The notes under the pieces: generated by a model
Databases searched by the model: none
What the model was told of the DNA's origin: nothing
What the model saw: only the letters and a program-made list of their open reading frames with translations
Program-made: the position numbers and the translations under genes
Assembly: GCA_900088475.1 (NCBI GenBank)
Contig: FLMG01003777.1
Location: forward strand, 11,145-75,144
Origin: Hyphochytrium catenoides
Lineage: Eukaryota; Protista; Hyphochytriomycota
DNA length: 64,000 bases
Direction of reading: 5' to 3'
Shown here: in pieces, positions 25,123 through 53,300 of the stretch
Layout: every line of letters begins with the position of its first letter
Numbering within the stretch: position 1 is the first letter of the stretch

Positions 25123-26862
25123 CTACTTATTGGCGGGACCACACCTGGACTGCAGCCAAGCCTCTGGCGCCCAAGTCGATAATGGCTTTAGAATGGTCCT
25201 GGACAGGGCCAGTCGAGGAATCCATCCGGTCTCCCCGTTCTTCTTTGTGCAGAACCAGAAGCTTTCCCCTGCCATTGCGGTCACTGCTAACTCCTCCTTT
25301 GCCTCAAAGGCCAGCAATGTAACTTTGTAGGGTTTCTTCAAGAGGAAGGCATGGCCATTCTTTGAGTCTACTCCATCGCTGGGCTCGCCCTGGGGCTCCT
25401 CTAGGAGCTCCATTGGTACAGGAACTTCCTCAACCTTGTGGAAGTTATGGGCCGGCAGGTGAGATAGCTTCTCCTTGGAGAGTCTCACCATCGCCCATGT
25501 CAAAGAAGCAGCAGCTCGTGTTCTTTGCAGCTCAGCACACAGTCTTTCCCCTTCGTCCTCCGTATTGTTCTCATCCTCATAGTGCCTCACCGTAACCACT
25601 TCATTCTGTTCCAGCACCACAGTGCCCTGTTCGCCTTTATCCCTTGCCACCATGGTCAAGGGAAACTGGGCATCCTCCAAGAACCCTTCAAAGGCTGTTT
25701 CTTCGTAGAGTGGCTTATGTAGAGCTGACGGATGGAAGTCCCAGTAGCAGTTCTTCGCCACAAACCGCTTGTTGAGCTCTGGGTGGGTAGAGTAAAACAC
25801 TTTCTCCTCTTCCTTACTATTCCCTATCACAAGGATCTCTCCGATGTCCGAGCTCTCTTTGGGCAAGTAAACACAGTGCGACACGCCATCTCCTGCCGGG
25901 AAGACCGCAATATCTCCTGCTTGCAGTTGGAAAGATTGGCCATCTATCCAGGCATAGACAGAGCCCGAGATGACGAAGACTATCTCATCTTCCAGTAAGT
26001 GTGCGTGAGGATAGGAGGTTCGGCTCCCAGGCAGTACCACCTCTTGATGGACGCCAAGCGACTTCAATCCTAAGATATGGCCTATGGGGCTAGACGGAAG
26101 CAGTAGCTCCAAATGTCCAGGGTAACTGCCCACACCCCAATCATCATCTCGAAGGTTCTCCCTCAAATTCCTAATAAATTCTGGTCTCTTCTTCTCTTGC
26201 TCAGGTGATCCGCTCTCATCACGGCGTTGTGTCAGGGAGAGGTTCTGCACATGAGTCGTCACAGCGCTAAGTTCCGCAGCCTGTCCCCGTCTGAGGTCTG
26301 GAATAGCATCGTGAGGTCCTAGAGAATGCTTTGGGGCATCAGACCACTGCTCCCTCTGGGGGACTGCGTCCTGCTTAGCCTGATTCAGGACATAGATTAT
26401 CTTGTTGCTATCGAGCTTTCTGTCCCCAATTGATAGGAGGGCCACTTCATCATCTGTGTTGTTGAGGAAACAGTGGGCAATGCCAGTGCCAGCTGCGAAA
26501 GCTACGCAGTCGTACGGTCGCAAGTCATAGATGAAGCCGTTGACCCAAACCTGTGGATTACCCTTGAGCACCAAGACAAACTCATCCTCTTCGCTCTCGG
26601 CATGGGGCAGTGAAGAACGCTGGCCTGGAGCCAATATCTGGTGATTGAAGCCTACATGCTTTAGGCCGAAGATTTGCCCTACCCGACAGACATCGTCAGA
26701 GACATAGTGTGAATCTTCCTTTCCCTTTTTTTCATTAAGAACAGTATCGTCTTTGACTGGTTCCAGTCCTGAAGACTGTTGCTGTGAGCCCTTATCCTTG
26801 GTTGCTGCGACCTTCTTACGAAGAGCTTCGATGCTTGTGATAAAGTCCGGGCGCCCTGTCAT
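25123..26862 (-). CDS. Intronless tandem double cupin (bacterial TM1287/COG3837-like) with C-terminal GNAT-like and SH3-like segments
   Basis: Two homologous cupins, each preceded by RP(D/E)FI: GFNHQILAPGQRSSLPHAESEEDEFVLVLKG...FAAGTGIAHCFLN and GVHQEVVLPGSRTSYPHAHLLEDEIVFVISG...FPAGDGVSHCV. The C-terminus contains FEAKEELAV...FWFCTKKNGETGWIP. Confidence 0.85.
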   Translation of the reverse strand: MTGRPDFITSIEALRKKVAATKDKGSQQQSSGLEPVKDDTVLNEKKGKEDSHYVSDDVCRVGQIFGLKHVGFNHQILAPGQRSSLPHAESEEDEFVLVLKGNPQVWVNGFIYDLRPYDCVAFAAGTGIAHCFLNNTDDEVALLSIGDRKLDSNKIIYVLNQAKQDAVPQREQWSDAPKHSLGPHDAIPDLRRGQAAELSAVTTHVQNLSLTQRRDESGSPEQEKKRPEFIRNLRENLRDDDWGVGSYPGHLELLLPSSPIGHILGLKSLGVHQEVVLPGSRTSYPHAHLLEDEIVFVISGSVYAWIDGQSFQLQAGDIAVFPAGDGVSHCVYLPKESSDIGEILVIGNSKEEEKVFYSTHPELNKRFVAKNCYWDFHPSALHKPLYEETAFEGFLEDAQFPLTMVARDKGEQGTVVLEQNEVVTVRHYEDENNTEDEGERLCAELQRTRAAASLTWAMVRLSKEKLSHLPAHNFHKVEEVPVPMELLEEPQGEPSDGVDSKNGHAFLLKKPYKVTLLAFEAKEELAVTAMAGESFWFCTKKNGETGWIPRLALSRTILKPLSTWAPEAWLQSRCGPANK

Positions 26863-30628: not shown

Positions 30629-33600
30629 ATGCAGTGGGCCGGCACCATGAAGCCCGCTCTAGGCGGTCTCGGTGGCAAGACGAAATTGCCACTGCAGAAA
30701 GGTAAGACGAATTTTACGGAGCATTATATAGCTGCTAAGTGGTACCGCGTGAGGCATGCTCATCACTGTGTCTTGGCAGAGGCGGCTCTTCGGAAGGCAT
30801 ACATCAATGATCATGAGAGAACACGGCAATATGCTCAAACTGAGCTTGGCCTCAAGATGGGATACTGCTCCAACAGTATCGTCACATCCAAGTACACAGT
30901 TTACAACTTTGTGCCCAAGAATCTGTTGGAGCAGTTCAGAAGAGTCTCGAACATCTACTTCCTTATTATCTCTGCCATTCAGCTCTTCACCAGGCTCTCC
31001 CCCACTAGCAGATACACCACTCTCATCCCTCTGTTGATCGTCGTCGGAGTAACGATGGTCAAGGAAGCCATAGAAGATAGAGCCAGACATGAAGCTGACA
31101 AGCGCGTTAACTTTTCCAGCTGCCACCGAATTAACCAAGCAAAACCCGAGTATGAAGAAGTCAGTCTCCAAGATCTTCGCGTAGGAGATGTTATCGTGCT
31201 TCATGACGGCGACCATGTTCCGGCAGACGTCGTTATCTTGGCCTCTAGTGACCCTCAGGGCCTCTGCTCCGTAGAGACTGCAAACTTGGACGGGGAGTCT
31301 AACTTGAAGATAAAGACTTCAGCCACAGTCTCAGTCTTCATGGACACGAAGCCAGAGGACTTGTGTAAGATCCGGGGCTGCGTGCACTACGGACAGCCGA
31401 ACGGAGATTTCTATCGCTTTGACGCGACGGTTGTCATCGATATGCTGACGGGGGAGAAGGCAGAGTTTCCATTAGCTATTCAAAACTTTATCTCCCGAGG
31501 CTGCAAGCTGATGAACACGGACTGGGTCATTGCAGTGGCAGTCTACACTGGGGCAGACACAAAGCAGACGCTTAACTCTCGCGATGTGCCTTCGAAAAAA
31601 AGTCGGATGGACAGGATCCTTGACCAATGCAACCTTCTCATCTTCTTTGCCCTATTATTACTTTGCTGTCTCACCACAGTTCTCTCATCTAAGTTCTTCC
31701 AAGGAGGTCTCCAGGTAATGGGGTTGACAAAGGACGTCAAGAAGTCATGGTGGTACCTCGATCTAAAGTCCGAAGATTTTGACGCGGTCTCGATGTTCGT
31801 GACTTTCTTGGTTCTATATAACTATCTGGTAAGTTCACTTCTAAGACCAGGAAAGAGGGAGAAAAAGTCCCTAGTGGAAGGACCAACGTTGAAGCTAGAG
31901 TGATTTAAATCTATTTGACGAGGACGCATTGCATACAAGCTAGCGACTCATCAGGCTATGTTTTAGGTTCCCATATCTCTCTACTTGACGGTCGAGGTGG
32001 TCAAGTTTCTGCAAGTGCGAGCCATTGAGAAGGACACGCTAATGGTAAGGATACTGGGCCTTATGAATGCTGCTTCAAACGAAAGGTGGAATGTGGGATA
32101 AGCTGGTGCCTTCTTCTACCGGCAATCCGAGCTGTTTTCTGCAGTTCTGTCAGTAGTGTCAACCGCTTAATCATCTCTCTCATTTTCACCTTTTTTCTCT
32201 CTCAATCTCGGGAAGATTGATCCTGAAACAAAGCAAGGAGCCATTGCTCGCACGTCCAACTTGAATGAAGATCTGGGGCAGATTAAGTATATCCTGAGTG
32301 ATAAGACGGGAACTCTTACCCAGAATAAGATGGCCTTCAAGGGCTGCTCTGTTGGAGGCATTATTTATGGTTCTCAGGTATGGATGTGGGGGCTTCAAAA
32401 GGAGACAATAGTAAGGACAAGATTGAGATGGAAGCAAGATAATGAGGACAAGATCGCGATAGAGAGAAGAAGAGGCAAAAGGGAAAGTTCGATAGAGGGA
32501 AGAAGAGGCAAAAGGGAAAGTAACACCATGCTATGCCCGACTGGTGATAGATAGCCTTGCGAGTGACAAGCTGATTTCTAACTAAATCTGTTAGCTCACT
32601 AGATACAAAGCTAACATCATAGTAACGGTTACTAATCTTGCCGACCGTCAAACACCTATGTACGCCTAGGATGCACCCGCAGGAGAAATTTCTCAGAGCA
32701 AGGCTTCAAGTTCCTGTGATGACGTGACGTCGCCCCGTCGAGCTCCAACTCCGGGCAAAGAAGGCGCAACTGAAGAACAAGTTAAAGCCCCACGCAGTGG
32801 ACTGAGGTCTGAAAACAACAAAAGTCAAGGGCGGGATAACTACGATTTGCCATCTCCTGCTGGGTTGTCGGGAAGATCAGCCAAACATGCAGTTGTGCCT
32901 ATTGTGCTTCCGGTGAAACAGAACCCATCTCCGGGAGAGGGGACTGAAGAGAAAAGACTTTCGGCAGACTCAGGTCAGGGAGAGCGCGCTGAGACAAGCC
33001 GTACAAAGAAGAGGAGGTCTTCTACGTATCCCCTCTCTGCCGGATTCTCGGATCCCATGCTGATTCAACATCTCACCTCGGACCATTCAAATCAGTATCT
33101 GCTCCAGGAGTTTCTTCGTTGTGCCGTGATTTGTCACACCGTTTCCCCAGAAGCAACAGACGGGGATGAGGTCATTTATCGTGCAACTTCTCCCGATGAG
33201 CAAGCACTGGTGATGGCAGCCAGAAATCTAGGATACAAGCTGATCTCTACAAAGGGAGGACGAATTACTGTGAGTGTGTTTGGCGAACTGGAGACCTGGG
33301 AAGTGTTAGGGGTGAACGAATTCGACAGCGCGAGAAAGTGTATGAGCGTGGTGGTGAGAGATAGTAAAGGGAAGGTGGTTGTGTACTGCAAGGGTGCGGA
33401 CGCAGTCATGTTAGAAAGAAGCAGAGATAAGTCCGTTGGGAGCCCTTCTCGTTGTTTTGGTGAGGGGTCTCGACAGAAAGAAAGTGGAAGAGTTCTGCTT
33501 GCCAAAAGCGCGCCAGTGGACCTTTCTCCTGGCTCAGTGAGTCGGTACGCCACCACAGAAAGCACAGAGAATGTGGAAAAAAGTGAGGTTCTGGATTACA

Positions 33601-36600
33601 CAGCTACTCCGGATTCTCCTGTTCCCCCTTTAGCTCTAAAAGGAAGAGGAGCTATGGGAAGTAAGCAGAGTCAGAACCAGGTGCTTGTCGGGCATTTAAA
33701 GAAGTTCGCCTCCCAAGGGCTGAGAACTCTCGTTTTCGGCCGGAAGGAGATGTCTGAAGAGGAATTCAGGTGCTGGTATTCTGAGTTTCAGATGGCTAAC
33801 AAATCAATAATGCGGAGAGACGAGGAGAAGTTAGCAATTGCCAGGAAGTTGGAGAGTAACCTTGAGATCCTAGGGGCCAGCGCTATAGAAGACAAGCTAC
33901 AGGACGGTGTGCCCGGTACAGTCAGTCGCCTCTTGAAGGCAGGGATCAAGATTTGGATGCTCACAGGTGAGGAGAAGTATGGAAGGAGGAACAGAGTATG
34001 AGGGAGGCTTCTGAACATTAGGGATTGTAACGCTGTGGGAGTAACTGGTCGTGTCGAACTATGTTACATTGAAAGAGATCCTTGGGAACTATGTTATTGT
34101 GAAAGAGTGACCAAAAGCAGAACGTAGTCCCAACACGTGATAGGCCTGTCACAAGGAACAGTTCTTCAACTGAACTAATCAATTTTGCAGGAGACAAGGA
34201 GGAGACAGCAGTCAACATCGGCCACAGCGCCTCTCTGCTGGATCAGTCTATGAAAATGCTCCCCATAAACGGCCCTAAACCAAGTAACTGTATTGAGCAG
34301 CTCAAGTATGCCTTCAAGCACTGCAAGAGAAACAGAGACGGGGATAGCAAGAACAATGCTTTGGCTCCTAAGCACGCGGTTGTCGTTACCGGAGAAGCTA
34401 TCAAAATGATCTCGGAGAGTAGGGAGCAGATCAAATATGGAGTTCAGGAGCTCGAGCTCTTCATGGTAAGTATAGTGGAACATGCTGAGTGCGGCCACAC
34501 GAGAAGTAGGGTAGGCCAATATTAGAGGCAGGAAGGAAATTGAAGGGGTATCTGGACCGGGGAAGGAACAAGAAGACGACAAACTCTATATTGAGGACAG
34601 AGAGGGAAACTCCGAGAAGCAAACGAAGCTAGGCCTTCGTCCACCACACCTGACGAATCCCTTTTCTCCCTATTTTCAGGTCCTGCGATACGTCCTTCTT
34701 AACTGCACATCGGTCATTGGGTGTCGGCTCACCCCGATGCAGAAGGCGTCTTTAGTCACTCTTCTCAAGGAGGAAGAACGAGGGACTACTCTAGCTGTCG
34801 GGGATGGCGCAAATGACGTGCATATGATCCAAGAGGCCCACGTCGGAGTTGGCGTTATTGGAAACGAAGGTCGTCAAGCGGTGAACGCTGCGGATTTTGC
34901 AGTCCCAGACTTTAAATGTCTCAGCCAGCTTCTGCTCTACCATGGGCGCTGGAACTACCGACGGGTGGCGATCGTGATCTTGTACAGCTTCTACAAGAAC
35001 CTGTGTCTTGTCTCGTCCCTTTTCCTCTTTGTGCTAAGAAATGGGATGAGTGGCGCCGCCCTGTTCGAGAGCTACATGATGATGGGCTGGAACGTGCTTT
35101 ATACCTTCTTTCCTGTCTTAGTTCTAGGAGTTACCGATAAGGTGAGCTTCTGCCTCGAGCCTTTCGGTTTCCCTAACCACGAGAATCCTTTCTTTATACG
35201 GCCAACGCACTTTGCACGTTAGCCCTGGATGACCCGCCTAATAGAGTTCTCGACATCTTGTTTTCTGAATTCATTCATTCTGTAGGACCTTTCGGAAGAG
35301 GCAGTAATGGCCTACCCTGCGATCTATGAGAGGGGCCAGCTGGATCGCGAGTTTGGCTGGGAGAAGCTTTTGCAATGGGTGTCAAATGGTATGCTTCATG
35401 CCACAATCAACTACCTAGGACACACGATCATCTTTTATGGCAGATTCGGCATTACCAGTTCGGAGGTAAGTGAAGAAGTTAGAAGCTGCTAAGTACTCCT
35501 TAATGCCGGCCGTGGCCCTGGTACGTCTGGCCGCTGTCAGACTGGACTCTCTTCGTAACAAATTTGTCTCAGGACCCTAGCTCAGTAAAACCATTTCCTG
35601 TCTTTCTGATTCTTTTCACCTTTAGGGAGTAAGCGATGGCTTGGACATCATGGGCAGCTCCATCTACATCCTCCTTGTTGTCATCGTCAACCTTAAAATG
35701 GCCTTAACCATGCAGCCTCTCAAACATTGGACGGCGTATCACTACATTTCTATTGGAGGGTTAGTCTTTTCCATCTACTCTCTCCTCTTTTCTCCTTTAC
35801 CTCTAGACTCTGCTCGGTATTTCAAACCTACCTACTGCCTCGCCATGTGTTATTTGCCGCCGCAAGTGCACCGTACCAGCACCTTTCATTCAGTTTAAGT
35901 GTGAACTTTTGGACTCTTTCGCCACGGATTCACAAATGTGCTACCTCTTTCATCAGTAGTGGTATTGCTAACCTTATCTAACTCGGAAGTTCCGCGAGGC
36001 AACACTAACACTTATCTGCCTGCTTTCCTTCCCTATGGTCTTTCCCCAACACTTTCTCGACACCCTCTCCCCTGCCTTCTATTTCTCATCTTCTACAGGT
36101 CTATCCTTCTTATATTTGCCTTCGTCGTTATCTATTCTGTACTATATCAAGCCTTGCCCGTCATGAACTTAGGGGCGGAGTACAATTCCGTAGGGACCAC
36201 ACTCTTGACCAGACCAAACTTCTGGCTTGTGCTGGTTCTTCTCCCGTCTTGCTGCATACTGGCGGACATCGCCATCACATTCCTCCATCGAAGCATCTTT
36301 CCGTCCGCCTACGTTCTGCTCCGGAGCTTGGACCAGTTGGGTCCAGAGTACGCTCAGGCTTTCGCTGCCCAGAGGGGTAACCTCTCATGTGAGGAGTCCT
36401 TGGATGCCACTGTTGTAGACCCGAGCACGAATGGTAGGTAAACCGCGGATATAGCTTTTATAGCGATGTCCACTTTATACTGCTTGTCCCTATCTATGTT
36501 ATAATCTACTACTGGCCATACAGCTGGATTGACATAGACCGCCCCAGCCAGGACCCTGAGCTGTTTCCATCCAATCTGCGTTGTCCTCTCCACCTGCCTT

Positions 36601-39600
36601 TTGGTTGCTTATACTGCTTAAGCTACTGTAACCGTAGTCCTTGGTTAGACGTGGGCGACGAAGCCCTGATCCTTACGTTACAAGAGATACTCGCCACTAA
36701 CGCCGTTCTCGCCTGCCCTCGTCCACTGTTAGTCACGGATGCCAATAGCGCAAACAAGCTGACTGATCCTCTACTAGACCGCTTGAAGAGGGTGGTCACG
36801 GAGGAAGAGGCGAAGAAAGATGAAGTCCAGCGTTATTTCTTAGACCTCTATGGGCTGCTCCGCGCACAAGAAAGGAAAATTGCAAGGACCATTGGCATGG
36901 TATGGATAACGGCATGTCACGACTTTTGCCAAGCTTTAATCAGATCTTCAGCATTACAAGCTTGGCTGTCAACACTTCTGACACTCGATCTCTTACATTT
37001 TGTTGATAGGATGATATTTTCGAGCTTGCAGAGGAGAGAAGAGTCGCACATGAGGAGGCAGTGGATACGAAACTCCACCCTCTGACTCTGGAGTTTGCAG
37101 GAACGGCGCGACGATACTTGGAAACGCTATATAATAGGCAGTTCTTAAAGAGAGAAGTCTCGCGCCTACGAGTCTTGATTATCTTTACGATTATCGCCCT
37201 GCCATTTTATACCGTCTGGTACATGCGCTTCTCTTCTCAATCCATCCATCCCTCTAGATTTGGGTCCATTTCTTGTATACAGACATCATTCTCTCCATCA
37301 TCAGCTTTCTTTTCTCTCGCACATCATCCGTTCGTACCGGACTTGAGAACTTGTCCCCACTTAATTGAATGTGACCGCGAGTGGCTTTCTTGGGTTTTCT
37401 CCTTGCTTGCAATTCTTTGCTAACCTTACTTCTTCCTAATGCCCTTTATTAAACTGGCTGTGATTTCTTCTCTCTCTATGCTTAGGGAGTATCGGTTTGA
37501 CAACCAGAAGACATTCCCTGTCCGACTCACCTACTTGGCATGCGCCATATTCTCTCTGGGAGTAACATACTCGAAGTTTTTCTTCAAGTACTACCACACC
37601 ATAGTCTTCGTGGTTTTCCTTATCATAACTCTGGCCAACACGTCCAGCATCGCCATCAATGGGCAATTTGCAATTACTTTGCTGCCCACGGTAATGTTCT
37701 CAGTGATACGTATGAGGTAAGTAATTGTGTCTCCTTCTCTCACTTCATAGGTCTGTTAGGACTTTTTGCCTAAAGTGTCTTTCCTCCCGCTCAAACGGGA
37801 CTGCTAGGACTCTTTGCCTAGAGTGCGCGTGTGCTTCCTCTTTTCCGTCAACAGCGAGCTCATCAAAAGTGTGATTTCTTTCCGTATGTTAGATCATCTT
37901 CCAATACCTCCATCCCATTATCTTGATTCGCTCTTCCTGGTAGATGTCCTAAAACGTTGCAATATAATTTTCTTACCTTGGTCCACCTACTTTATTGCTC
38001 CTTAGTAACCGTCGACATATTCCTTAGGTTTCTGGATGCGGTGCTGCTCGTTTTGACAGATACCATCTTTTATAGTTTGGTGATGTATATGTACTACGCC
38101 AATGACGCGGAGACGAAGGCGCTACACATGATGACATTCTTCCTCATCTCTGTCATATTCTCCGCCTGTTTCGCTGGCTACGGGTCCTACAATTTGCAAG
38201 GTCTTCCGCTTCATAGACCTCACCGATACCTCCTTTTTTTCCTGACACTTGAACTTTGCTCCTTTGGTGACATCCCACAGTCGTCAATAACTCCTTGTAC
38301 TGGTTGGTCTCTTCCGTCGGACATTCGTTGAACCTGTGCATGCATTCGCCTGCTGATATTGCTGTGTAGCGCGATCTCACCAAACTACCTGTAACTTCAG
38401 TCATTTCTGCCTCAAACTGACAACTTTCGTGAAATTTAGTGGCAATGAGAAGAGACTTTCTCCAGCAACGCACGCTGGATATAGAGCAGAAACGCTCGCA
38501 GGACATCTTGGACAACATATACCCATCACATGTCACGAAGAGAGTTCAGGCGGGAGAAACAACAATTTTCGACGAAGAGCCAAACGTCACCGTCATATTC
38601 TGTAACATCTGCGAGTTCGAGGAGCTTACTTCAATGATGGGGCCGGATCAGCTAGTTTCTGTCCTGGATATGGTATATTCCATGTTTGACCTGCTTTGCT
38701 TAAAGCATGGAGGTAAGCCCAAGCTGTAGAAAGAACGCGCGACCACTAAGTATAGATTGGCCATTTGAGAGAGGGAGTTGACGCAGGTTTACACAATCAC
38801 CAATCAAGCCCTAGTCCTTATAACTTAGCCCCGTACCTTGGTTCCATCTATGGATGCTTTTCGTAACCTTTCATTGACGCCCCGTAATATGAAATGCAGT
38901 TCACAAGATGGAGACTGTGGGCTCTATATATATGGCCTGTGCTGGGCTTAGGAACTTCAAGAGCGATGACCCTGCGCTGAGCGCTGCCGCTACGGCATAT
39001 GACATGATAAGATATGCTGCCGAAGTTGGCATTAGCCTACAGATAGGTATAAAACCTGGGACTTTCTCAAACTTCTAAACATCTCCTGTATGTCCCCAAG
39101 TTTCATGATAACTCCTCCGCGATCCCTCATCCTTTTAATCATTCGTTTCGTATACATTTCACAACTGCTAATAACTGAGTGTCTTGGGCGATCCTCATTA
39201 TTTGCTGCTAATACAATAGGTCTGCACACCGGGAGAGTTGTGAGCGGCTTGGTTGGGCAAAAAAAGCAGCAGTTCAGTCTATTCGGAGATACGGTGAATA
39301 CTGCGAGCAGGATGCAGAGCACAGGCCTGCCAGGAAAATGTCAAATATCTCAGAGCACTATGAAGGCACTGCAAGGAGCTTTTACCCTAACGGAACGGTA
39401 GGATTGAGTTCTATCTAAATCCTGTCGGTATCCCTTTTTTGTTCCTACTTCTTGACTATTCTGCCCCTTAATATGACATGCGTTCCGATAACTCTTAGGT
39501 TCATTGGCTAGCTTTTAAGCTCTCTCCCCCTCTTTTAGCTGCGCGATATCTCTCTCTGTCTAATATTTGTCCTTACGTAAAACAGCCGAGTAACTCCTAA

Positions 39601-42600
39601 AGGAAAGGGCGAGATGATAGTCTACATACTGGGCAACCCGGTCACGGAGAGAGCGCGCGCAGCCATAGAAGGACTCGCCCTTAAAGCTCGTAAACCATCT
39701 GAAAACAAGCGGTACAGCATAGTCCAGGGTCAGAACACTTCTGATGTCATCAACCTGAGCGCAACGATAGGCCGGCGGAACACCTTCTGGTAGGGGATAT
39801 GAAGGGAACGCAAGAGACATCGTTATGGGTTGGGCAAAAGCTGACTAGACATGGCGCCACTAGAATTAACGTATCCGAAAGTCTAGGTGTCCGCTTTCTG
39901 ATTAGCTCTTTTTACGACGGCCCCACCGGCCATTGCCCCTCTAGCTCTTTGGGCTCAAGGCTTGACCTCTCTGCCTCTCTGCACAGGGGAAGTGAGAACC
40001 GAGTACTCCCTTTCAGCTCTGAGTCTGCGGCTGCTACTGCATCTCAGCTTCAAGCAAACCTCGTCCAGAAGAGAAGGAAGAACTTTATGCGAAGAGCAAC
40101 TGAACTTTGGATAAGGCTGAGTCAGAACGATACCCTGAATGAGAAGATCAACGTTTTCACACTGAGGTTCCGGAATCGAGCCACTGAAGAGTGGTTTCAA
40201 GCTCAACGGCATTCACATTACATCAATTCCTCATACATGTGCATAGCTTTTGCAATTGTGTTTGTGATGTTAGGGTTGCCGCGCGATCATTATGGCTACG
40301 CTAGCTACTTTGGAGGAGACCTTGACGGTAAGTATCATTGTCCGGGCAGGGACTGCAGGCGCCTTTCGGTTTGACCGGTCCTTCTGTTACTTAAAAAATT
40401 CATGGGGGCCCTTGTACTGCCATCTTGTCGCTGCGGTAACCTGTTGTTGTTCTGCATAACACTTAGATGCTAGGTCACCTAATCGACTGCTGCTTATACA
40501 GATTTGACTACATCCGTGGCACTGCTCATGATCGGGTTTAAACTCTTCTACACTCTCTTCGCACTGGCCGTGATGATGTGGATCTATCGGAGAAGACACG
40601 ACATAACCTTGAACAATTTTCATATCTTGCTGTCGATCACGTATGGAAGGCTCCCCTCTTGCTCCATTTTGCTGCATTCGCTTTCTGCCTCCTTCACTAC
40701 CTACGAATGTCAGATAGCAACCCTTCGATTCATTTTTCCTTCTGGTACCACTTAAAAGCCACGCGATAGAGCCCACGTCTTTTCCTTATTTGTTGCCCAT
40801 CTCTTCCCTGTTCTAATCTCTGGACTCTGACTAACATCTATCTGCTGGTGTTTGCTTTCTCTCCTCAACTCACAGAATACTCCTGTGCGTTTGTGCACTT
40901 ACTACCGGTCACTACTGTGCGGGCTATCAGGTGGTGCAGACCTGCCCGGAGATGCGGAAGATCTATCGATACGCTAATGATTCCCAAATTGTTTGTATCC
41001 ACGAAGTAACCGGCGTGAGGTTCGAGAGGACCAAAGAAATGATGATTTCAACGATTTCAGCAGATCTTAAGATGATGCTGGACTCTGCGGCAATTGATCT
41101 TATGCTAGTCATGTTCCTCGTATCTAATGGAGGTGCCTTTGGACACTGGCGCTCCATTCTGCTCAACCTCTTTCTGTGCGCGTGCATGCTTTCTTTTCAA
41201 TTCTGGCTTGCTGGACACTCGGAGGGAGTTTTTAGATTGGGAACATTCTTTATGGGTACAACGGTGGTGGTCAACACCATTGCCAGCAGGTAGGAGATCG
41301 CTTAGCAGTCTACACCAGGGGTCACTGCGATACAAAAGTGTAATAAGGGTTGACAGCTAGGTTCTCTAGTATCTCTCCTGATACTGCTAAAGACTTAGTT
41401 TTCAGCTCCGGGTTTTCTACTCTGCTTCCTTGTAGCCCTCACAAGCTTCGTCACCTCTTTATCTGACGCGCCTGACAAACAGGGCTGTGGAGTTTTTCAC
41501 TAGAAGAAAGCTATGGCTCTTGCAGCAAACGAAACACGAGACAGATAAGGCTGACAGACTACTCTACCAGATGCTTCCTGAAGCGGTAGTCACAGCTCTA
41601 AAGGACGGTGATACAGTCTGCGAGGAGCATCATAACGTCGGCATCCTGTACAGCGACATTAAGGGGTTTACCTCAATTGCCAGCCGAGCAGAGCCAGAGC
41701 AAGTAGTTTCAATGCTAGATAAGGTGTTCACTGCCTTCGATCAAGCGGTGGAGAAGAACGGAGTTTTCAAGTTCCAAACAATTGGTGAGCCCATTAAGGA
41801 TATTCGCTCTTTCTCTCCATGCGACATCCCAAGTATTTTATTTCTGACATATTCTATCGGGTTGCAGGCGATGCGTACGTTATTCTCAGCGGCTTGCCAT
41901 ATCAGGACAAGGCCATTTCAGCCGAGCCACTCAGAGACCAACTGTCTCAAGCTCGTGGAAGGTAAGAGCTTAAACACCCGATTTGCTAAGTTGCAGACAT
42001 TTGCTGTCAGCCTAGAGTAGAAACGACTTTGCTGTCAACTGACAGCGCAGTCACGCATTTATATTACGCTTTTCGGTGGCCTGACTTGCTAGGTTCCCTT
42101 CCAATCCTTAGCGAACGGTTTTTTGTTCCTCTCGCTCAAACCTATTCCCCTTCACTAGCTGTCGGATCCTCTCTGAATTTTGACGATTGTCATCTCTTCT
42201 GCAGTGTCGTTATGGAGAAAGATTTCCTCCACCAACTGGCTTCTCGGCGAGGAGCTACACAGAAAGTCCTTCCTACTGATGGAGCATGTCCGTCACCTTC
42301 TACTCCGACGTCACCGAGTGGTGGAAGGAAGCGCTCAAATGCCAGTGTCAATCAAAGGAAGCTGAGCCTCGTGAAGTCTGGTTCTAATAACAATGGGACT
42401 AGCGCTACAAGGAGGCACCAAAGAAGGCGGAGCAGCAGTGCCGGAAGAACAAGCTATTTTGATCCAACCACTGCCATAGTGAAGAACAGTGAGGCGCATG
42501 CGAAGCACATGCAATCACTGATCGCGATGGCCCAGGACATGCTCAGAGAAACGGCCAAAGTTAACGATCCCATCAGTGGCGAACCGCTGCAGATCCGGAT

Positions 42601-42979
42601 TGGTATTCATACAGGAAACATCATCGGCGCAGTCATTGGTACAAAGAATCTCCGTTACGACATGTGGAGCCCAGATGCGCTAATTGCGCACGAGTTCGAA
42701 AGTAATGGTGTCCCCAACCGAATATGCGTAAGTGCAGCGGTGCGTGAGTGCTTCCAGAACGACATTGAGATGTCAGCAAAGTTCGTGCCTTACAAGGTGA
42801 TAGATACGCACAGTATGGGAAAGATTCAGGCGTACTTGTATGACGACAAGATCAAGCCAGCGGCAGCACTTATTGAGAGCATCAGGCACTCAAAGCGATC
42901 AATCTCCGTCTCCACCAATGGCGCACAGCACCCAGAAATGTGCGGTCATAGCGACCGTCAAAGTCAGTTCACCATCTGA
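30629..42979 (+). CDS. P4-ATPase (phospholipid flippase) - membrane guanylyl cyclase chimera, 23 exons, predicted 10+6+6 TM
   Basis: P4 motifs [40 protein letters not shown] (32300), [30 protein letters not shown]|DKEETA and GDGANDV. These are followed in frame, across GT-AG introns, by 6 TM, cyclase 1 ([28 protein letters not shown]), 6 TM and cyclase 2 ([13 protein letters not shown]|DAY, RIGIHTG, RYDMW). Confidence 0.93.
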
Positions 42980-43494
42980 ATGGCAACTTTGACATCACAC
43001 TGAAGGGTGCAGAATATTATCATTTCTATCATATCTCCATCATCTCATATCTAAGTCTGTTCAGCTGCGTATCCAAAGCTTTTCAGCTGCGTGCTATAAC
43101 GCGGATTCGTCTCTCAATCTAGAGAAACCAGCTAATCTATACATAATATCAAAGCTCGCAGCTATCATCAAGTCTTTAGCTCTTCGTTTCGACTTGGCCT
43201 GCAGGCTGCCGTTCTATTTGAGCTGATATATGCGGCCGTGTTTCTATTCTGTTAGATGCCTTTCACTTATCTTATAATAGCACGAACTAGTCTACGATGC
43301 ACCAGCGTCTGCCGTTCCCTGGTATCCTACCCTTAAGCAACAAAGCTGAAACCCTCACTACTGAACAGTACACAGGACCGTCGACATCGTCAAAAGGTTT
43401 GCGACGGTGGTGTATTTCTCCCGTTGCTAGCCGTCCTGACCCTCGATTGTGGTATCGCTATTAGAGTTCTTCAGGCAGTGGTGCATACACCATT

Positions 43495-47344: not shown

Positions 47345-50300
47345 ATGAAGGGACAAGCTTTAAACAGCGCGAGAGGAAGGTATATAAAATTCAGCCATGC
47401 CATTCACCGCAATTAGATAAACCTGTGTAGCGCTGACTATCCAGCCACTTAGCAGGAAAGAGCAGTTGGAGTCAACTTTTGGTTATGTTCCTCTGTCTCC
47501 TAACGAGGTGACCATGCTCACAAAGACAGAGGAACTCAAAAGACGAAGGAAGAGGCTGGAAGACGTTCGGAGGCAAGAAAGAGCGTTCGCTGCGGTGGTC
47601 CGTCAGCGCTATAGAAATCGGATGTACCACACCAAGGCTCAGGTTCTTGAGAAGCTTAAAGTAAGTTGAGCCTCTCTTGCATAAAACCAAGGGCAAGCCT
47701 TGGAAGAGTGAAGTCGAGATTAGTCTATCGCGTCAGGTAACCAGAGCGCTGAAAAGTCAAACTGGAAGATCATGAAGCGGATAGAAGGCCACCTTGGGCG
47801 TGACTTGTGTTGGATGGCAGCCTTGTAGTTGTGGAGCTAGAGCGATTGAGCGACTGGCACCTTGTTGATCGTGAGCTCACGTTGTGTGCACTGCAGAGTG
47901 AATGGGAGGCAAAGAAGAATGCTAATATTGAAAACCTAAGCCAGTCCTACACCAACGCGCTTGCGTCCCTTGGAAGTGCAAACCGCGGTGCTTCAGCTTT
48001 TACTGAAGAGGAGTTGATGCTAGCTGAGCGTCACGCGACGGTAAGATAAGAATCAGAGTTTAGAAGCTGCGGGCTGTCACGTCGAACGGCTTAGCTGCCC
48101 TTATACTGCCGTACCATGTAGCTAGGGCTACTTGTTATGCTTCCTGCTACTAGAAGTGTTTGACTCGCTGCGTGCGTTTCTGCTTTGTCCCTTATCCTCT
48201 GCGTGTAGTGGTGGCAGGAGAACTCTGCGGTGTCGAAGAAACGAAGCAACGTAGCTCTAGGACGCCAAAGAGAGGAGCTGCGAACAGTTCTTCAGCCTAT
48301 CGAGACAATGAAAATGAGACAGAAATTTCGAGACAATGCAGCCGTAGAGGAGAGAAGCCGAGCTAGGTTGAGGCAGATGAAGAGAGACAGAGAGGAGGCT
48401 GAAGAAAAAAAGCGAAAGACCACTTTTCCTCCCGATTTCCACGATATCCTTCTGGAAGACGAATCCAATATCGACGTCATTGGACCCAAGGATGTGGATT
48501 TCTCGAAGACAAGAGTGAGACACAGCATCGTTTGCCACAGAAACAAAGCTCATAGAAGTGCAGAAGAAGCAGCCGAGGAACACAGGAAGAAAGTGAAGGA
48601 GGAGGAACGAAGCCTAAATGAGCGGAGAAAGGATTTGGAAGAGAGGTCAAACGTCAGGGGAGAGAATGCGATATCTCTTGTACTCGCAGACCGAGACAGA
48701 GTAAGATTAGGAGAAGACCTCTCCCGACTTGGTACTATGCACGACCAGATGAAGACGTGGATGGGATCTAAGCATGCTACCTGGCAATCAATTGTGGGAA
48801 GAGAACGGCCGGACAGGGCAAGAAACAAACAGAAAGAGATGGAAGAACGTTTCGAGCGCCTTTTTATGACAGCCCCGACAGTGGACTATCCTAGTGTCAC
48901 GGTCCACACAGACGGTCTAGAGGAAGAACCCCGGTCTCCTATTGCCTATGATGGACAGGATGTGAAAAGGCTCTCTCCTCCCACTACTGTCTTGCCTCCC
49001 AGTAACTTCCTTAACAGGGACGAGGAAATGCAGTCTCCTTCTCCACCAGTCTCCAGTGGCGTCCCGCAACATCCAACGCCGGTCCGGGCGAAGGTAGACG
49101 GAGACATATGGCAGAAAGGGGATAGGCAGAGAGCTTCGGGATATCAGGAGGCTTCTATGGACGCTCGGAGGAGAGCCCAGGCCGATTATTCTCGAGTAGA
49201 ACGACCCGCAGGGAATGTAGCTCGATCTGACTTGCTAACAGAAGCTACTCCGGATTCAGTCCGTATCGTCTCCGGAATCCGGACAACTGGAGACAGCACC
49301 CGCGGATACCGCACGTCGCAAGCTACCACTGAAAGGAATTATTTTGATCATCGACGGCCCGTCGAGAGTTTAGCCCATGCGGCAAGAGAAAGCGGTGAGT
49401 CAGATGAAAGAGCAGAGCGAACTAGGTATCCGATCCAAGGATTGAACCTAGGGACCTTTCCATCAGTTCCAAGAGGATCCTCGGAGACTCTCTCCGCTCA
49501 AATTGAGGAACGTAAGGGAGAAGAAAGAGCGCAAAGCAGCCAGTTTGTTCAAGGGAGTCTGGAGCAAGAGAGTTTAGAGGAGTCACAGGACGAAAGTGAG
49601 GACCTGTCTGCTCACTCTCTCCTTGAAAGTGCCCGATCATCCTCAATACTCTCCGCTTCGCCTCTTAGCGAAGACCAAAGGGAAGTAGGTCCGGAAGTAG
49701 ACAGCTTCCAGGTTTTGGGAAAGAATATGAGGGCAGCCATCCAAAATATGGAGACTCTGCTCAGGCGAGAGCCAGCTGCTGACATAGCCCATCGGCCAGC
49801 AGGTCTCAGACGGGATGGTACGGCGTCAGACAGACAGGAATTGGGGAAAAAAGAACCAACATCGATTCCATCAGCACTTCCTGACACTCTTGATCTATCA
49901 TTGCCTAAGGAAGTGACGGAAGCTGGAAATTTGCCTCACGAGACCTCAAGTGCAAGAGAAGTCTATGTAAAGTCCGAAAAGCAAGGAATGGAAAGGGAAC
50001 TGCCAAGAGCAGGGTCTCCATTACCGTTTTACGCGGCCCCGGCTCCATCTCTAACTACCGTGGCACAACCCCTAGAAAATACTCCAGAAAAGCGAAAGCA
50101 AGCGGGAGAAGAGCTTTTCGAAGAAGAGAAGCTGTACAAGCGTGACAATTTGGATGACGAAAGATCGTTGCATCCTGAGTTCCACGACAAGGAGAAATCC
50201 ACAGGTACTATTATACATGACCTTCAACACGTTGCACGTGTTTTAACCTTGGTCTGCACTTTGTCCGGCAGTTCATCTGCTTTCCCGTCATGCTGGGGTG

Positions 50301-53300
50301 GACGTTCCACCCATGGAAAGCTGGGTGGCAGACGAGGATTCAGATGTTAGCGATGAGAGTCCGCAAGGATCACTTGGGAGGGAGCAGGATTTCTTAACCG
50401 TCAGATCCCCTATCCGCAGATATAGACAGAGCCATCAGCACCTGGAAATACATATTCGTAAGCTTCAAGAGGACCTAAGAAACACGGCACTTGGCAGTGG
50501 AGAAGAATCCGAGCAAGGGGTAAATGATGCATTAGATGTCAGTCATATTCGTGCTGTCGAGACTGAAGAATCACCTGCTAAGAAAATTGCAGAGGAAGAC
50601 GGCAAAAAACGTGGCGAGAAGAGACAGGATGGGGAGCCGATGGACATAGAGATTAGCAAATTCCAGGAAGAGCATCGGAAACTGCAGGAGCAAGTGCAGA
50701 AGCTCCGTATGGAAAGATTACAACTTCTATCCCTCCGCAGCTCGTCTTTGTTATCTTCCTCGTCTCTGTCGACGCCCGAGATAAGCAGACCAGAGAGTCC
50801 TGAGATGGATAAGCGCTCCGCACCACAAGTAGAGGGAGCTCCGTCTTTACCCAGAGCGGACGCTCTTCTCCAAGATCGTCGGGAAGAAAGCCCACCAATA
50901 GCTAGCAGGCCCACCCCTCAGCCACAAGCGCTGTATCAGGAGGCAAATGGCCAAGAAGCAGGGTTCTTTCCTTCTCTAGCAGAAAATATAAATCATAATC
51001 TTGACAGAGTCAAGGAGAGAAAAGCAGAGGGGGAGGAGGGAAGGGACTCATCTCCAAAAGAGGGATATAGTAGCCGGGCATCCCCGGCAGCAGTCCGTTC
51101 AGAATGGTACGGGGCCCGTTATGACTTCGGTGCTTTTGGCGGTAGTGTGTCATCTCTTCTACCCACTGAACCATCCCGGTCTGCCGGTGGGGCTCCTCAG
51201 CGTTCAACAGCCACGGCGAGTGACTTGAGCAGCCTTTCTCGCGGGAACGGAGGTATCAGAGGCGTGACACCTCAGACTGAAGTCAGAGAAGATCTACCAA
51301 GCACTGTACTTCTTTCTGTACCAGTTAGCAGGCCGATGGGAGCTTCGGAAGAACGACGCACACCTTTGGGCTCTCCTGAGGAACCTTCCAAGACTTTATC
51401 GGCGGAGAAAGATGGAAGTGTAGAGGAGAATACTAACACCATGATCGCCCACAGTCATCAGAATGTAGAGCAAGCTGAAGAGCACCATGGTTCAGAAGGG
51501 CTCCCTCTCTCTCCTCTCTCTCAGATGATAGAGGAGGAACGGGTCTATGGCTTAGGTTTGGGAAAGGAAGAAGAAGAGTACCTCACGGCTTTACTCGGGG
51601 ATGATGACTACCCTCTCTCTGTCGAGTCGCAGTTGCCTCTCTCTCCCTATCGTCTCGAAACAGAAGACGTGGGATCGTGGGAAGACCAATATTTGGACTC
51701 GTTATCTCATCGTCAAGACCTCAGAAGAGAGAGCGGCTTAATTGACCCAAACACCGTCCCGATTGCTTTGGGTAGGGATGGAAGGGTGCCTGGCAAAGCT
51801 GGCAAAGAGTCTACATACGACGAGGTCAAGATCGAGAGGTCCTTAGGGGTAGTTGCGGAAGAGAGGCAGGTAGGGTTCTCATCCTCCCCTACTGCGGAGG
51901 TTGAGGCGCAGTCGGTTACTCAAAGCAGATTTGCTTCAAGTGAGAGCAGAGGAAATACGGTGCCAAATGTGGAGCAGGTGCCAATTGAGGTCGAAAAGGC
52001 TAAGACAGCTAGGATTCCCAGTCTTCAGGGTTTGGGTACACCAACTCCAGTCGTGGATGAAGAAGAAGAAGCGATACTTCCCTCCTACTTGCAGGGCATC
52101 GTCAGCAGTCAAGAGAGAGATTACTCGCAACCTTTACCTCCCTTTCCGCACCAGCACTCTGTGGTACTGGAGAGTCAACAACTTCAGGAAAGAAGCGAGG
52201 TAGTACGGGTACAGAAAGATGAAGCTGGCCAGGAGACAAAGGACGTACGCAAGCACCGTCGTGGAGCGGAGTCACCACCCGACCTTCCAACGGAAGCTAA
52301 AGACGCAACTGAGTCAAGAGAGCAGAACCATCCGGTGACATTTGCGAGGCGAGAGGACAATCACGATGGATCGGAAGCCCACTGGCCCCAACCCGTCGAG
52401 AGGAAGGAAGAGGTGAAACAAGTGGACAACGCTCCCATTTTGGTGCCAGTAGAGCGACGGTACCCAGTCAAAGCAGGACAGGAGGAACTCTCACTTACAC
52501 TTGCCGAAGGAAAGAAGCAGGAAACGGATCAGGACATTGCCGAGGCGAGCCCAGAACAGGAAACGAGATCTAAGTCAGACAGAGCAGATAGTCACAATTA
52601 TCAGCGTATTTCCACTTTTTCTGAGGCTTATGACAGGCCCGAGGAAAAACAAGATGAAGGGAACGGCCTAATGGATAAAGCAACCAAGACTGATGAGAAA
52701 CGCGAGACTTTCTCTCGCGCTTTAAATGACGATAAATCGAGACAATCGCCGGTCCTGGAACAAGAAGAGCGCAGCACGACAGTGCTTCCTACTGCGCTTG
52801 GCATAGAGAGCGTTTTACATCCGTCAGCCTTCTCAAGGCCTGACGAGGACAGAAGCATATTCGTCGAAAGACTCTCCCCGGAATATTCTCAGTTGTATCA
52901 AGAGGGCATTGTGGTAAAGGATGTGGAAGAGCCTTCGGTACCTTTTGGATTCTCGGGCCCTAGCCCAAGTTCAGGGGAGAGGTCCGCCCAGGGCGAAGAG
53001 ATCTTGCAAACGACGAAGCCTATGGAAGAAGCGGTCGAGGTGGACTCGAAGAGACCAGGATCTTCAGCTGCCTGGACCAACCCAGAACCAACATCAGCGA
53101 ACCGCGGGGCCGACTGGGAGTCCCACCTAAAGGAACATCTTTCTTTTGCCAGTCCTTCCCCTATCTCCTCTTTGGCCGACTGGGAGTCCCACCTAAAGGA
53201 ACATCTTTCTTTTGCCAGTCCTTCCCCTATCTCCTCTTTGGAGGCTCTTGCGAGTGGCGATGATGAGGACCTTAGCTTGGTAGCAGCCCGCACAAGGTCG

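What the first reader, a model, noticed from the sequence alone, without database searches (positions are those of the whole stretch)
30629..42979. Intact P4-flippase/guanylyl cyclase chimera in a standard-code protist that may lie outside the studied lineages
Seen: what the ORF track shows as many pieces joins in frame through 22 GT-AG introns into one polypeptide of P4-ATPase plus a 12-TM double cyclase, with no stop at the junction (about 36100-37220). The ATPase catalytic motifs are all intact (DKTGT, DGES, TGD, GDGAND, PISL). Established: such chimeras are characterised in alveolates (Paramecium/Tetrahymena GC, Plasmodium GCalpha/GCbeta, Toxoplasma GC) and have been reported in oomycetes. 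Inference: this genome does not use the Paramecium/Tetrahymena code, and its neighbouring genes do not suggest an apicomplexan to me. The gene may extend lipid-flippase-coupled cGMP signalling to a new lineage and help date the fusion. The architecture itself is not new.
Basis: partly seen in the sequence, partly recalled or inferred. Interest (0 to 1): 0.8.

Follow-up and report, generated by a model that had tools for sequence, protein, structure and literature searches.

The report
Flippase–guanylate cyclase gene, oomycete relative
This is a real, apparently working gene that joins a lipid-flipping pump to a cGMP-making enzyme; it sits in a close relative of the water moulds (probably Hyphochytrium catenoides), so it adds one expected lineage to a family that is already described.

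Summary
Window 30629-42979 (+) can be read as 23 exons joined by 22 GT-AG introns into one stop-free protein of about 2,700 residues. It has a complete P4-ATPase (10 membrane spans; DKTGT, LDGES, TGDK, GDGAND and PISL all intact) followed by a 6+6-span double class III cyclase.

The cyclase halves are "swapped", as in Paramecium and Plasmodium guanylate cyclases, and carry guanylate-type E/S purine residues.

The fusion rests on in-frame GT-AG solutions at the junction, a conserved linker, and full collinearity with oomycete orthologues. One of these, in Pythium insidiosum, is a single uninterrupted ORF. No RNA run was available, so a single transcript is inferred, not shown.

In separate and combined trees, both halves place the gene as sister to all oomycete P4GCs (100/100), with bicosoecids next. 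A neighbouring gene, the intron density, the diploid SNPs and the run dates fit Hyphochytrium catenoides.

Wiser 2026 (PMC13466520) already describes this chimera in all alveolates, oomycetes and bicosoecids, but does not mention hyphochytrids. The gene is therefore a new member of a known kind and does not re-date the fusion.

In passing, I found the same architecture in a haptophyte, a rhizarian, a euglenid and Diphylleia.

The scan also read this same stretch in an overlapping window (s1-367395).

The parts
30629..42979 (+). Whole P4GC gene: working model of 23 exons and 22 GT-AG introns, 2,714 aa (2,639-2,773 aa under alternative introns)
   Evidence: collinear with oomycete P4GCs over its whole length
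30629..31828 (+). Exon 1: start ATG, PhoLip_ATPase_N, TM1-TM4 start, A-domain with LDGES (31289)
   Evidence: donor 31829 GTAAGT chosen with 8/8 homologues
31967..32044 (+). Exon 2: TM4 with the PISL motif (31970)
32216..32377 (+). Exon 3: phosphorylation motif SDKTGTLT (32300); 3' end uncertain (alternatives 32519/32543)
32697..33966 (+). Exon 4: N-domain (Cation_ATPase) with a low-complexity insert, and start of the P-domain ending in TG of TGDK; 5' end uncertain (32683-32974)
34191..34465 (+). Exon 5: P-domain continuation
   Evidence: donor 34466 GTAAGT, acceptor 34679
34680..35141 (+). Exon 6: GDGAND (34800), start of PhoLip_ATPase_C, TM5-TM6
35286..35465 (+). Exon 7: PhoLip_ATPase_C continuation
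35626..35816 (+). Exon 8: TM7-TM8
36099..36437 (+). Exon 9: TM9-TM10 and the conserved post-TM10 tail ([12 protein letters not shown]); last flippase exon (alternative end 36433)
36438..36523 (+). Intron 9, the junction intron. Donor GT at 36434 or 36438; possible acceptors at 36523, 36547, 36622, 36637, 36648, 36684 or 36732, all in frame. The 36434-36732 option fits the oomycete profile best. A TAA at 36439-36441 would end the flippase if this intron were not spliced.
36524..36899 (+). Exon 10: linker. Its first ~70 codons have no oomycete counterpart and may be intronic. Its end carries the conserved block [10 protein letters not shown].
37010..37218 (+). Exon 11: conserved pre-membrane block HPLTLEF...LE..Y...F..RE and cyclase span M1
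37486..38200 (+). Exons 12 (37486-37716) and 13 (38028-38200): cyclase spans M2-M6
38440..39397 (+). Exons 14 (38440-38712), 15 (38900-39046) and 16 (39220-39397): first catalytic domain. It lacks both metal Asp (FCNICEF, GS) and carries E (METVG, 38908), S (FSLFG, 39273), and N and R ([10 protein letters not shown]), so it resembles mammalian C2.
39586..41289 (+). Exons 17-20 (39586-39728, 39887-40327, 40502-40640, 40876-41289): c1b linker and spans M7-M12; introns 17 and 19 are uncertain
41483..42979 (+). Exons 21 (41483-41784), 22 (41868-41961) and 23 (42112-42979, with stop): second catalytic domain. It has both metal Asp (YSDIKGFT at 41649, TIGDAY at 41775) and lacks N/R, so it resembles mammalian C1. 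It carries a long Ser/Arg-rich insert.

Best explanation
The locus is one intron-rich nuclear gene. It encodes a P4-ATPase/guanylate cyclase chimera (P4GC) of about 2,700 residues and 22 membrane spans, and is orthologous to the oomycete P4GCs. The host is a sister lineage of oomycetes, most probably Hyphochytrium catenoides.

Shown: the domain order, the intact flippase catalytic motifs, and a single asymmetric cyclase active site built from a C2-like first domain (E/S purine residues, N, R) and a C1-like second domain (two metal Asp). Also shown: in-frame GT-AG continuity, a conserved linker, and the sister position to oomycetes for both halves.

Inferred from work on Plasmodium, Toxoplasma and Paramecium: the protein makes cGMP from GTP at a membrane, and cyclase output depends on the phosphorylation cycle or conformation of the appended flippase, probably with a CDC50-type partner. 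Membrane lipid or ionic state would thereby be coupled to cGMP effectors.

In this free-living, zoospore-forming organism the likeliest role is control of flagellar motility, taxis or encystment. This is speculative.
For: Pfam domains appear in the right order. A 22-intron stop-free model was built, and all tested alternatives remain in frame. All five flippase motifs are present. Hydropathy shows 10+6+6 peaks. The first cyclase domain aligns best to AC8/AC5 C2 with S at the D1018 position and N and R kept; the second aligns to C1 regions with the metal Asp kept. This is the C1/C2 swap described for alveolate GCs (PMC5746546). The gene is collinear with oomycete proteins across the junction, and linker blocks are conserved in exons 10-11. 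Only one Met codon lies in the model between 36300 and 37486. The Pythium insidiosum orthologue is one uninterrupted ORF of 2,879 codons spanning the ATPase, the junction and the cyclase part up to residue ~2,621 of the 2,738-aa annotated protein. Logan DNA contigs of three runs cover the junction without joints. In the trees, window plus oomycetes get 100* (cyclase half) and 97* (ATPase half), and 100/100 in the careful combined tree; oomycetes without the window also get 100/100. The neighbouring Pho88-ankyrin gene has its named relatives almost only in oomycetes, at 37-45% identity. [quoted passage not shown]
Against: There is no transcript evidence: only DNA runs hold the stretch. A TAA follows the junction donor, so an unspliced message would give a stand-alone flippase. 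Six introns, including the junction intron, cannot be fixed without cDNA. The host name is circumstantial, because run and organism names are coded and there is no rRNA or tRNA in the window. Guanylate versus adenylate specificity, flippase activity and the biological role are all inferred. The meaning of the E/S pair rests on my recollection of Paramecium mutagenesis work, which I did not retrieve.
Confidence: 0.85

Rival explanations
1. There are two adjacent genes: a stand-alone P4-ATPase ending at the TAA at 36439-36441, and a separate 12-span cyclase gene starting downstream. The fusion would then be an artefact of my splicing model.
For: A stop codon lies immediately after the proposed donor, and the ~50-residue tail after TM10 would be a normal flippase C-terminus. 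No RNA is available. An ATG at 36897 directly precedes the donor of intron 10.
Against: The conserved linker blocks ([17 protein letters not shown]) lie at or upstream of the only candidate Met and align with the same blocks in single-polypeptide oomycete proteins. The Pythium orthologue is one continuous ORF. Several good GT-AG pairs restore the frame. Both halves show the same phylogenetic position and similar branch lengths.
Confidence: 0.07
2. The gene is real, but the host is not a hyphochytrid. It could be an early-diverging oomycete or another gyristan stramenopile, in which case the lineage may or may not be already covered by the published survey.
For: The organism is coded and no marker gene lies in the window. 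An unnamed environmental protein (P0089) also branches near the base of the oomycetes. The Hyphochytrium label comes from circumstantial fits and from other agents' unchecked notes.
Against: The gene sits outside all sampled Saprolegniales and Peronosporales with 100/100 support. Its 22 introns contrast with the near-intronless oomycete orthologue. The dense allelic SNPs, the 2011 and 2017 runs from one study, and the 50-102 Mb of Logan contigs per run (compare the 68-107 Mb initial assemblies in the paper) match the H. catenoides paper.
Confidence: 0.1
3. The gene is a decaying or non-functional copy, like the anomalous P4GC paralogues reported in Aphanomyces and other taxa.
For: Long low-complexity inserts occur in the N-domain and inside the second catalytic domain. 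Expression is unknown.
Against: There is no stop or frameshift in any conserved exon. All flippase and cyclase catalytic residues are kept. The gene scores 1,936-1,952 bits against an oomycete P4GC profile.
Confidence: 0.03

Closest known systems
Oomycete P4GC (e.g. Pythium insidiosum ATCC90586_003017 = P0200; Phytophthora infestans 'phospholipid-transporting ATPase, putative' = P0182; surveyed in PMC13466520)
   Same: The domain order and the length (2,600-2,750 aa) are the same. The flippase motifs are intact, the linker blocks are conserved and the C1/C2 halves are swapped. These are the nearest relatives in both halves: about 37-40% identity in the ATPase half and 50-57% in the cyclase half.
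   Different: The window gene branches outside all oomycete copies, before the split between the long clade and the short Saprolegniales clade. It has 22 introns, against an almost uninterrupted ORF in Pythium. It carries larger inserts in the N-domain and in the second catalytic domain.
Bicosoecid P4GC (Cafeteria roenbergensis FNF31_04308 = P0211)
   Same: It is a stramenopile P4GC with a well-kept flippase module, and it is the next clade out in all three trees.
   Different: It is longer (3,211 aa). The Cafeteria copy has Q in place of the LDGET glutamate (Table 2 of PMC13466520), whereas the window keeps E (LDGES).
Apicomplexan GCs (Toxoplasma TgGC/TgATPaseP-GC; Plasmodium GCalpha and GCbeta)
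   Same: The architecture and the C1/C2 swap are the same. These are the only members with functional data: cGMP leads to PKG, calcium release and egress or motility, and the ATPase catalytic Asp is needed (PMC6592433, PMC7858053, PMC5746546).
   Different: They are much larger (3,100-4,400 aa). Several have degenerate flippase motifs. Their role in microneme secretion and gliding has no counterpart in a hyphochytrid.
Paramecium/Tetrahymena guanylate cyclase (Linder et al. 1999, cited in PMC5746546)
   Same: [quoted passage not shown] Its ciliary location suggests a role in motility.
   Different: In Paramecium and Tetrahymena the flippase modules are strongly degenerate (conservation scores 0.55-0.64, with D or E substitutions), although the ciliate Blepharisma scores 0.97. 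Here all motifs are intact.

Membership tests
P4GC (P4-ATPase/guanylate cyclase chimera) | N-terminal type-P4 ATPase module with signature motifs ([12 protein letters not shown][ST], TGD, GDGAND, PISL) and 10 membrane spans | tested here: met
   Pfam PF16209, PF00122, PF13246, PF00702 and PF16212; all five motifs found; 10 hydropathy peaks
P4GC (P4-ATPase/guanylate cyclase chimera) | C-terminal pseudo-heterodimeric class III cyclase: two sets of six spans, each followed by a catalytic domain | tested here: met
   Two PF00211 regions; 6+6 hydropathy peaks; PDB sequence matches to AC8, AC5, AC9 and GC chains
P4GC (P4-ATPase/guanylate cyclase chimera) | Both modules in one reading frame (one gene) | tested here: met
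   A stop-free model with 22 GT-AG introns; all alternatives stay in frame; collinear with single-ORF oomycete orthologues
P4GC (P4-ATPase/guanylate cyclase chimera) | One mRNA and one polypeptide actually made | not testable with these tools
   No RNA run holds the stretch; read laying could use DNA contigs only
P4GC (P4-ATPase/guanylate cyclase chimera) | Catalytic halves swapped relative to mammalian adenylyl cyclases (first domain C2-like, second C1-like) | tested here: met
   Exon 16 aligns best to the C2 of AC8 and AC5, with N and R kept. The exon 21/22 domain has both metal Asp, which the first domain lacks. The feature is described in PMC5746546.
P4GC (P4-ATPase/guanylate cyclase chimera) | Guanylate-type purine-selecting residues and GC activity | tested here: inconclusive
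   E (METVG) and S (FSLFG) occupy the positions of AC K938 and D1018, so the site is not adenylate-type. Equating E/S with GC specificity rests on my memory of Paramecium mutagenesis. Enzyme activity was not measured.
P4GC (P4-ATPase/guanylate cyclase chimera) | Groups with known P4GCs in trees of each half | tested here: met
   Sister to all oomycete P4GCs in the cyclase tree (100*), the ATPase tree (97*) and the careful combined tree (100/100)
P4GC (P4-ATPase/guanylate cyclase chimera) | Cofactors and effectors (CDC50, UGO/SLF, PKG) present in the genome | not tested
   Only this window can be read. The scan's notes have no CDC50 entry. An unchecked first-reader note reports a PKG-architecture kinase elsewhere in the genome (s1-336252).
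Mammalian-type 12-span adenylyl cyclase (class IIIa AC) | Lys/Asp purine-selecting pair in the C2-type domain; no N-terminal ATPase | tested here: not met
   Glu and Ser stand at those positions, and a flippase module lies in frame upstream
Stand-alone P4-ATPase flippase | Protein ends shortly after TM10 | tested here: inconclusive
   This would hold only if intron 9 is not spliced (TAA at 36439). Homology and frame continuity argue for continuation into the cyclase. There is no RNA.

The most novel reading that the evidence does not exclude
The hyphochytrid copy branches exactly where the organism does, so P4GC was inherited vertically within stramenopiles. Taken with the full-architecture P4GC proteins I met in a haptophyte genome (Diacronema lutheri), a rhizarian (Spongospora), a euglenid (Ploeotia) and the CRuMs flagellate Diphylleia, the fusion may be far older than the stramenopile-alveolate ancestor proposed in 2026, or may have moved between supergroups.
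Probability: 0.35. Interest if true: 0.55.

Novelty: new member of a known kind. Interest (0 to 1): 0.3.

Why it matters
The gene gives the P4GC family a representative from hyphochytrids, the sister group of oomycetes. The only dedicated survey (July 2026) did not look at this group. Because both halves branch where the organism branches, the gene supports vertical descent of the fused gene in stramenopiles, rather than a late transfer into oomycetes. It also shows that the two oomycete paralogue types arose after the split from hyphochytrids.

The copy has a fully intact flippase and sits in a culturable, non-pathogenic organism, which may make it a convenient subject for asking how the flippase controls the cyclase. 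It does not change the picture of where or when the fusion arose. The non-SAR hits noticed in passing bear more on that question.

Tried and rejected
(1) I first took the top hit of the all-library search (P0001, a Boothiomyces chytrid, 298 bits) as a sign of a fungal host. That was wrong. The protein is a merged model with two ATPase copies plus a phosphatase domain, which doubled its score.

(2) Rfam and tRNA scans of the window, meant to name the host, found nothing.

(3) The exact-sequence look-up of a neighbouring single-exon ORF was not on record. The all-library search gave no protein above 49% identity to exon 4. The host's own proteome is therefore apparently not in these collections.

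(4) The ESM Atlas feature search of exon 4 returned only generic P-type ATPase fragments and no useful taxon.

(5) The RNA test of the junction could not be done, because the look-up of sequencing runs returned DNA holders only.

(6) My first spliced-alignment output extended a false exon past the stop (43006-43211) and chose weak short introns in unconserved stretches. I replaced these using splice-site scores and profile scoring.

(7) Paper searches for Hyphochytrium plus cyclase/cGMP, and for haptophyte or rhizarian P4GC, found nothing relevant.

(8) In line with the operators' rule, the joined 23-exon protein was not sent to any search or folding tool. Exons were searched by reference. The joined model was used only inside run_python, for the frame check, hydropathy, cutting homologues with local BLAST, profile scoring, alignments and trees.
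Full report
**What is there**

The + strand between 30.6 and 43.0 kb holds a chain of open segments. Pfam assigns these, in order, to PhoLip_ATPase_N, E1-E2_ATPase, Cation_ATPase, Hydrolase and PhoLip_ATPase_C (four pieces up to 36438), then to Guanylate_cyc twice (38439-39398 and 41487-42976). The window has no tRNA or Rfam match.

I wrote a protein-to-DNA spliced aligner and ran it with eight oomycete homologues. I built splice-site matrices from the firm introns and enumerated frame-preserving GT-AG pairs for the rest.

The working model has 23 exons and 22 GT-AG introns. It runs from the ATG at 30629 to the stop at 42977-42979, gives 2,714 residues and has no internal stop.

Sixteen introns are firm; ten of them were chosen identically with all eight homologues. 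Introns 3, 9, 10, 11, 17 and 19 are ambiguous. Every alternative I scored against an oomycete P4GC profile stays in frame and scores 1,907-1,952 bits.

Hydropathy gives 10 + 6 + 6 membrane spans. [23 protein letters not shown] and PISL are all intact.

**The junction**

Exon 9 carries TM9, TM10 and a post-TM10 tail that aligns with the oomycete tail. A TAA at 36439-36441 follows immediately after a GT donor (at 36434 or 36438). Seven acceptors between 36523 and 36732 restore the frame; the 36434-36732 pair fits the oomycete profile best.

Downstream, two linker blocks ([10 protein letters not shown] in exon 10 and HPLTLEF...LE..Y in exon 11) align with the same blocks of oomycete proteins. The model has only one Met codon between 36300 and 37486.

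The oomycete proteins are collinear with the window across the whole junction. In Pythium insidiosum the orthologue lies in one uninterrupted ORF of 2,879 codons, which covers the flippase, the junction and the cyclase part up to about residue 2,621 of the annotated 2,738-aa protein.

Logan DNA contigs from three runs cover 35878-37274 without any joint, so the DNA is contiguous there. These runs may be the ones the assembly was made from.

No RNA run holds the stretch. A single transcript is therefore a strong inference, not an observation.

**Catalytic make-up**

Exon 16 aligns best to the C2 domains of AC8 and AC5. It has Ser where adenylyl cyclases have the adenine-selecting Asp, and it keeps the Asn and Arg of the transition-state pair. 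Exon 15 supplies Glu at the Lys position. This first domain lacks both metal-binding Asp residues.

The second domain has both metal Asp ([14 protein letters not shown]) and lacks Asn and Arg. This is the C1/C2 swap, with guanylate-type purine residues, that has been described for alveolate GCs (PMC5746546).

The enzyme should therefore have one competent active site. The appended flippase has every residue needed for a phosphorylation cycle, and in PfGCalpha that catalytic Asp is required for function (PMC7858053).

**Host**

An HMMER search of exon 4 against 1.84 billion representative proteins found nothing above 49% identity, so no close relative and no self match. The apparent best hit, from a chytrid, was an artefact of a duplicated ATPase in a merged gene model.

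A word search seeded with a Diphylleia P4GC brought in about 100 named P4GCs. By tblastn, the oomycete copies are nearest in both halves.

In the trees (LG+C20, PMSF) the window gene is sister to all oomycete P4GCs. Support is 100* in the cyclase half and 97* in the ATPase half; oomycetes without the window get 99* in both. The careful combined tree gives 100/100 for both branches, with the bicosoecid clade next.

An unrelated neighbour, a Pho88-ankyrin fusion at 2381-3457, has its named relatives almost only in oomycetes, at an even 37-45% identity.

Several further features match the published Hyphochytrium catenoides genome (PMC5795050):
- the gene has 22 introns, whereas the Pythium orthologue is nearly intronless;
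- the contigs differ by dense allelic SNPs;
- the holders are DNA runs of 2011 and 2017 from one study, each with 50-102 Mb of contigs.

Other agents' notes on this genome reach the same name. I treat those as leads only. I put the host assignment at about 85-90%.

**What is known**

Wiser 2026 (PMC13466520) surveyed 'P4GC' and reports it in all alveolate lineages, in 30 oomycete species and in three bicosoecids. [quoted passage not shown] The paper does not mention hyphochytrids or labyrinthulomycetes, and I found no paper linking Hyphochytrium to this enzyme.

The window gene is thus a new member from an unsampled lineage, but one that was phylogenetically expected. It supports vertical descent within stramenopiles. 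It also places the split between the long oomycete clade and the short Saprolegniales clade after the divergence from hyphochytrids. It does not move the date of the fusion.

**Likely function**

By analogy, the protein makes cGMP at a membrane under control of the flippase module, which would respond to lipid or ionic state, probably with a CDC50 partner. The signal would feed cGMP effectors.

Unchecked notes from this scan report a PKG-like kinase, a voltage-sensor phosphodiesterase and cyclic-nucleotide-binding lipid enzymes elsewhere in the genome.

Ciliate P4GC is ciliary, and P4GC is absent from Blastocystis, which has no flagellar-associated genes. The hyphochytrid dispersal stage is a uniflagellate zoospore (general knowledge, not retrieved here). 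Control of zoospore swimming, taxis or encystment is therefore my best guess. It is untested.

**Noticed beyond the finding**

Proteins with the full architecture also occur in these organisms:
- Diacronema lutheri (haptophyte genome);
- Spongospora subterranea (Rhizaria);
- Ploeotia vitrea (euglenid);
- Diphylleia rotans (CRuMs, at least five paralogues);
- Cantina and Colponema.

This is wider than the 2026 survey states. In my ATPase tree the P4GC flippase modules were not cleanly separated from canonical P4-ATPases. I did not resolve either point.

**Limits**

There is no RNA evidence. Six intron boundaries remain open. The host name is inferred.

It was used only inside scripts, so no structure prediction of the whole protein was made.

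Noticed in passing
proteins P0217, P0263, P0280/P0165, P0130 and P0156-P0160, P0255, P0203 (not in the window): Full P4-ATPase plus double-cyclase architecture occurs in Diacronema lutheri (haptophyte genome), Spongospora subterranea (Rhizaria), Ploeotia vitrea (euglenid transcriptome), Diphylleia rotans (CRuMs transcriptome, at least 5 paralogues), Cantina marsupialis and Colponema. The July 2026 survey (PMC13466520) states that none exists outside alveolates, oomycetes and bicosoecids. The transcriptome cases could be contaminants, and the genome cases could be merged gene models.
   Followed up: partly
tree (ATPase halves): P4GC flippase modules did not form one clade apart from canonical P4-ATPases. 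One canonical protein (P0002) sits inside the stramenopile/Diphylleia P4GC group, and two P4GCs (P0227, P0230) sit among canonical ones. This could mean several independent fusions, or simply weak deep resolution.
   Followed up: no
trees: Oomycetes carry two P4GC types: a long one (2,250-2,750 aa, all orders sampled) and a short one (2,000-2,100 aa, plus one 2,826-aa Achlya model), seen only in Saprolegniales in my sample. The window gene branches before this split. An unnamed ENA protein (P0089) branches near the base of the oomycete clade, though its exact position varies between trees.
   Followed up: partly
window 2381-3457 (+): A single-exon gene fuses a Pho88 (ER phosphate-transport-related) domain to ankyrin repeats. 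The same fusion is present across oomycetes at 37-45% identity, and in Platysulcus at 34%.
   Followed up: partly
window 34700-40600: Logan contigs of the three DNA runs differ from the window and from each other at about 70 listed single-base places and a few 1-2 base indels in 5.9 kb, consistent with two alleles of a diploid.
   Followed up: no
window 25123-26862 (-): An intronless ORF of 579 aa has two cupin domains plus an SH3-like domain. The exact protein is not on record in the gene-position collection.
   Followed up: no
window 48230-54578 (+): Two very long open segments (706 and 1,426 aa) have no Pfam match. Other readers of this scan call this region a CEP295/Ana1-like gene.
   Followed up: no
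protein P0001 (Boothiomyces macroporosus KAJ3254954.1): This public gene model merges an inositol-phosphatase-type domain with two successive P4-ATPase copies. This inflates its score in sequence searches and could mislead taxon inference.
   Followed up: yes
window 42112-42505: The second catalytic domain carries an insert of about 130 residues, rich in Ser and Arg, between the metal-Asp strand and the IGIHTG strand. It is about 80 residues longer than in oomycetes. Part of it could be an unrecognised in-frame intron.
   Followed up: no
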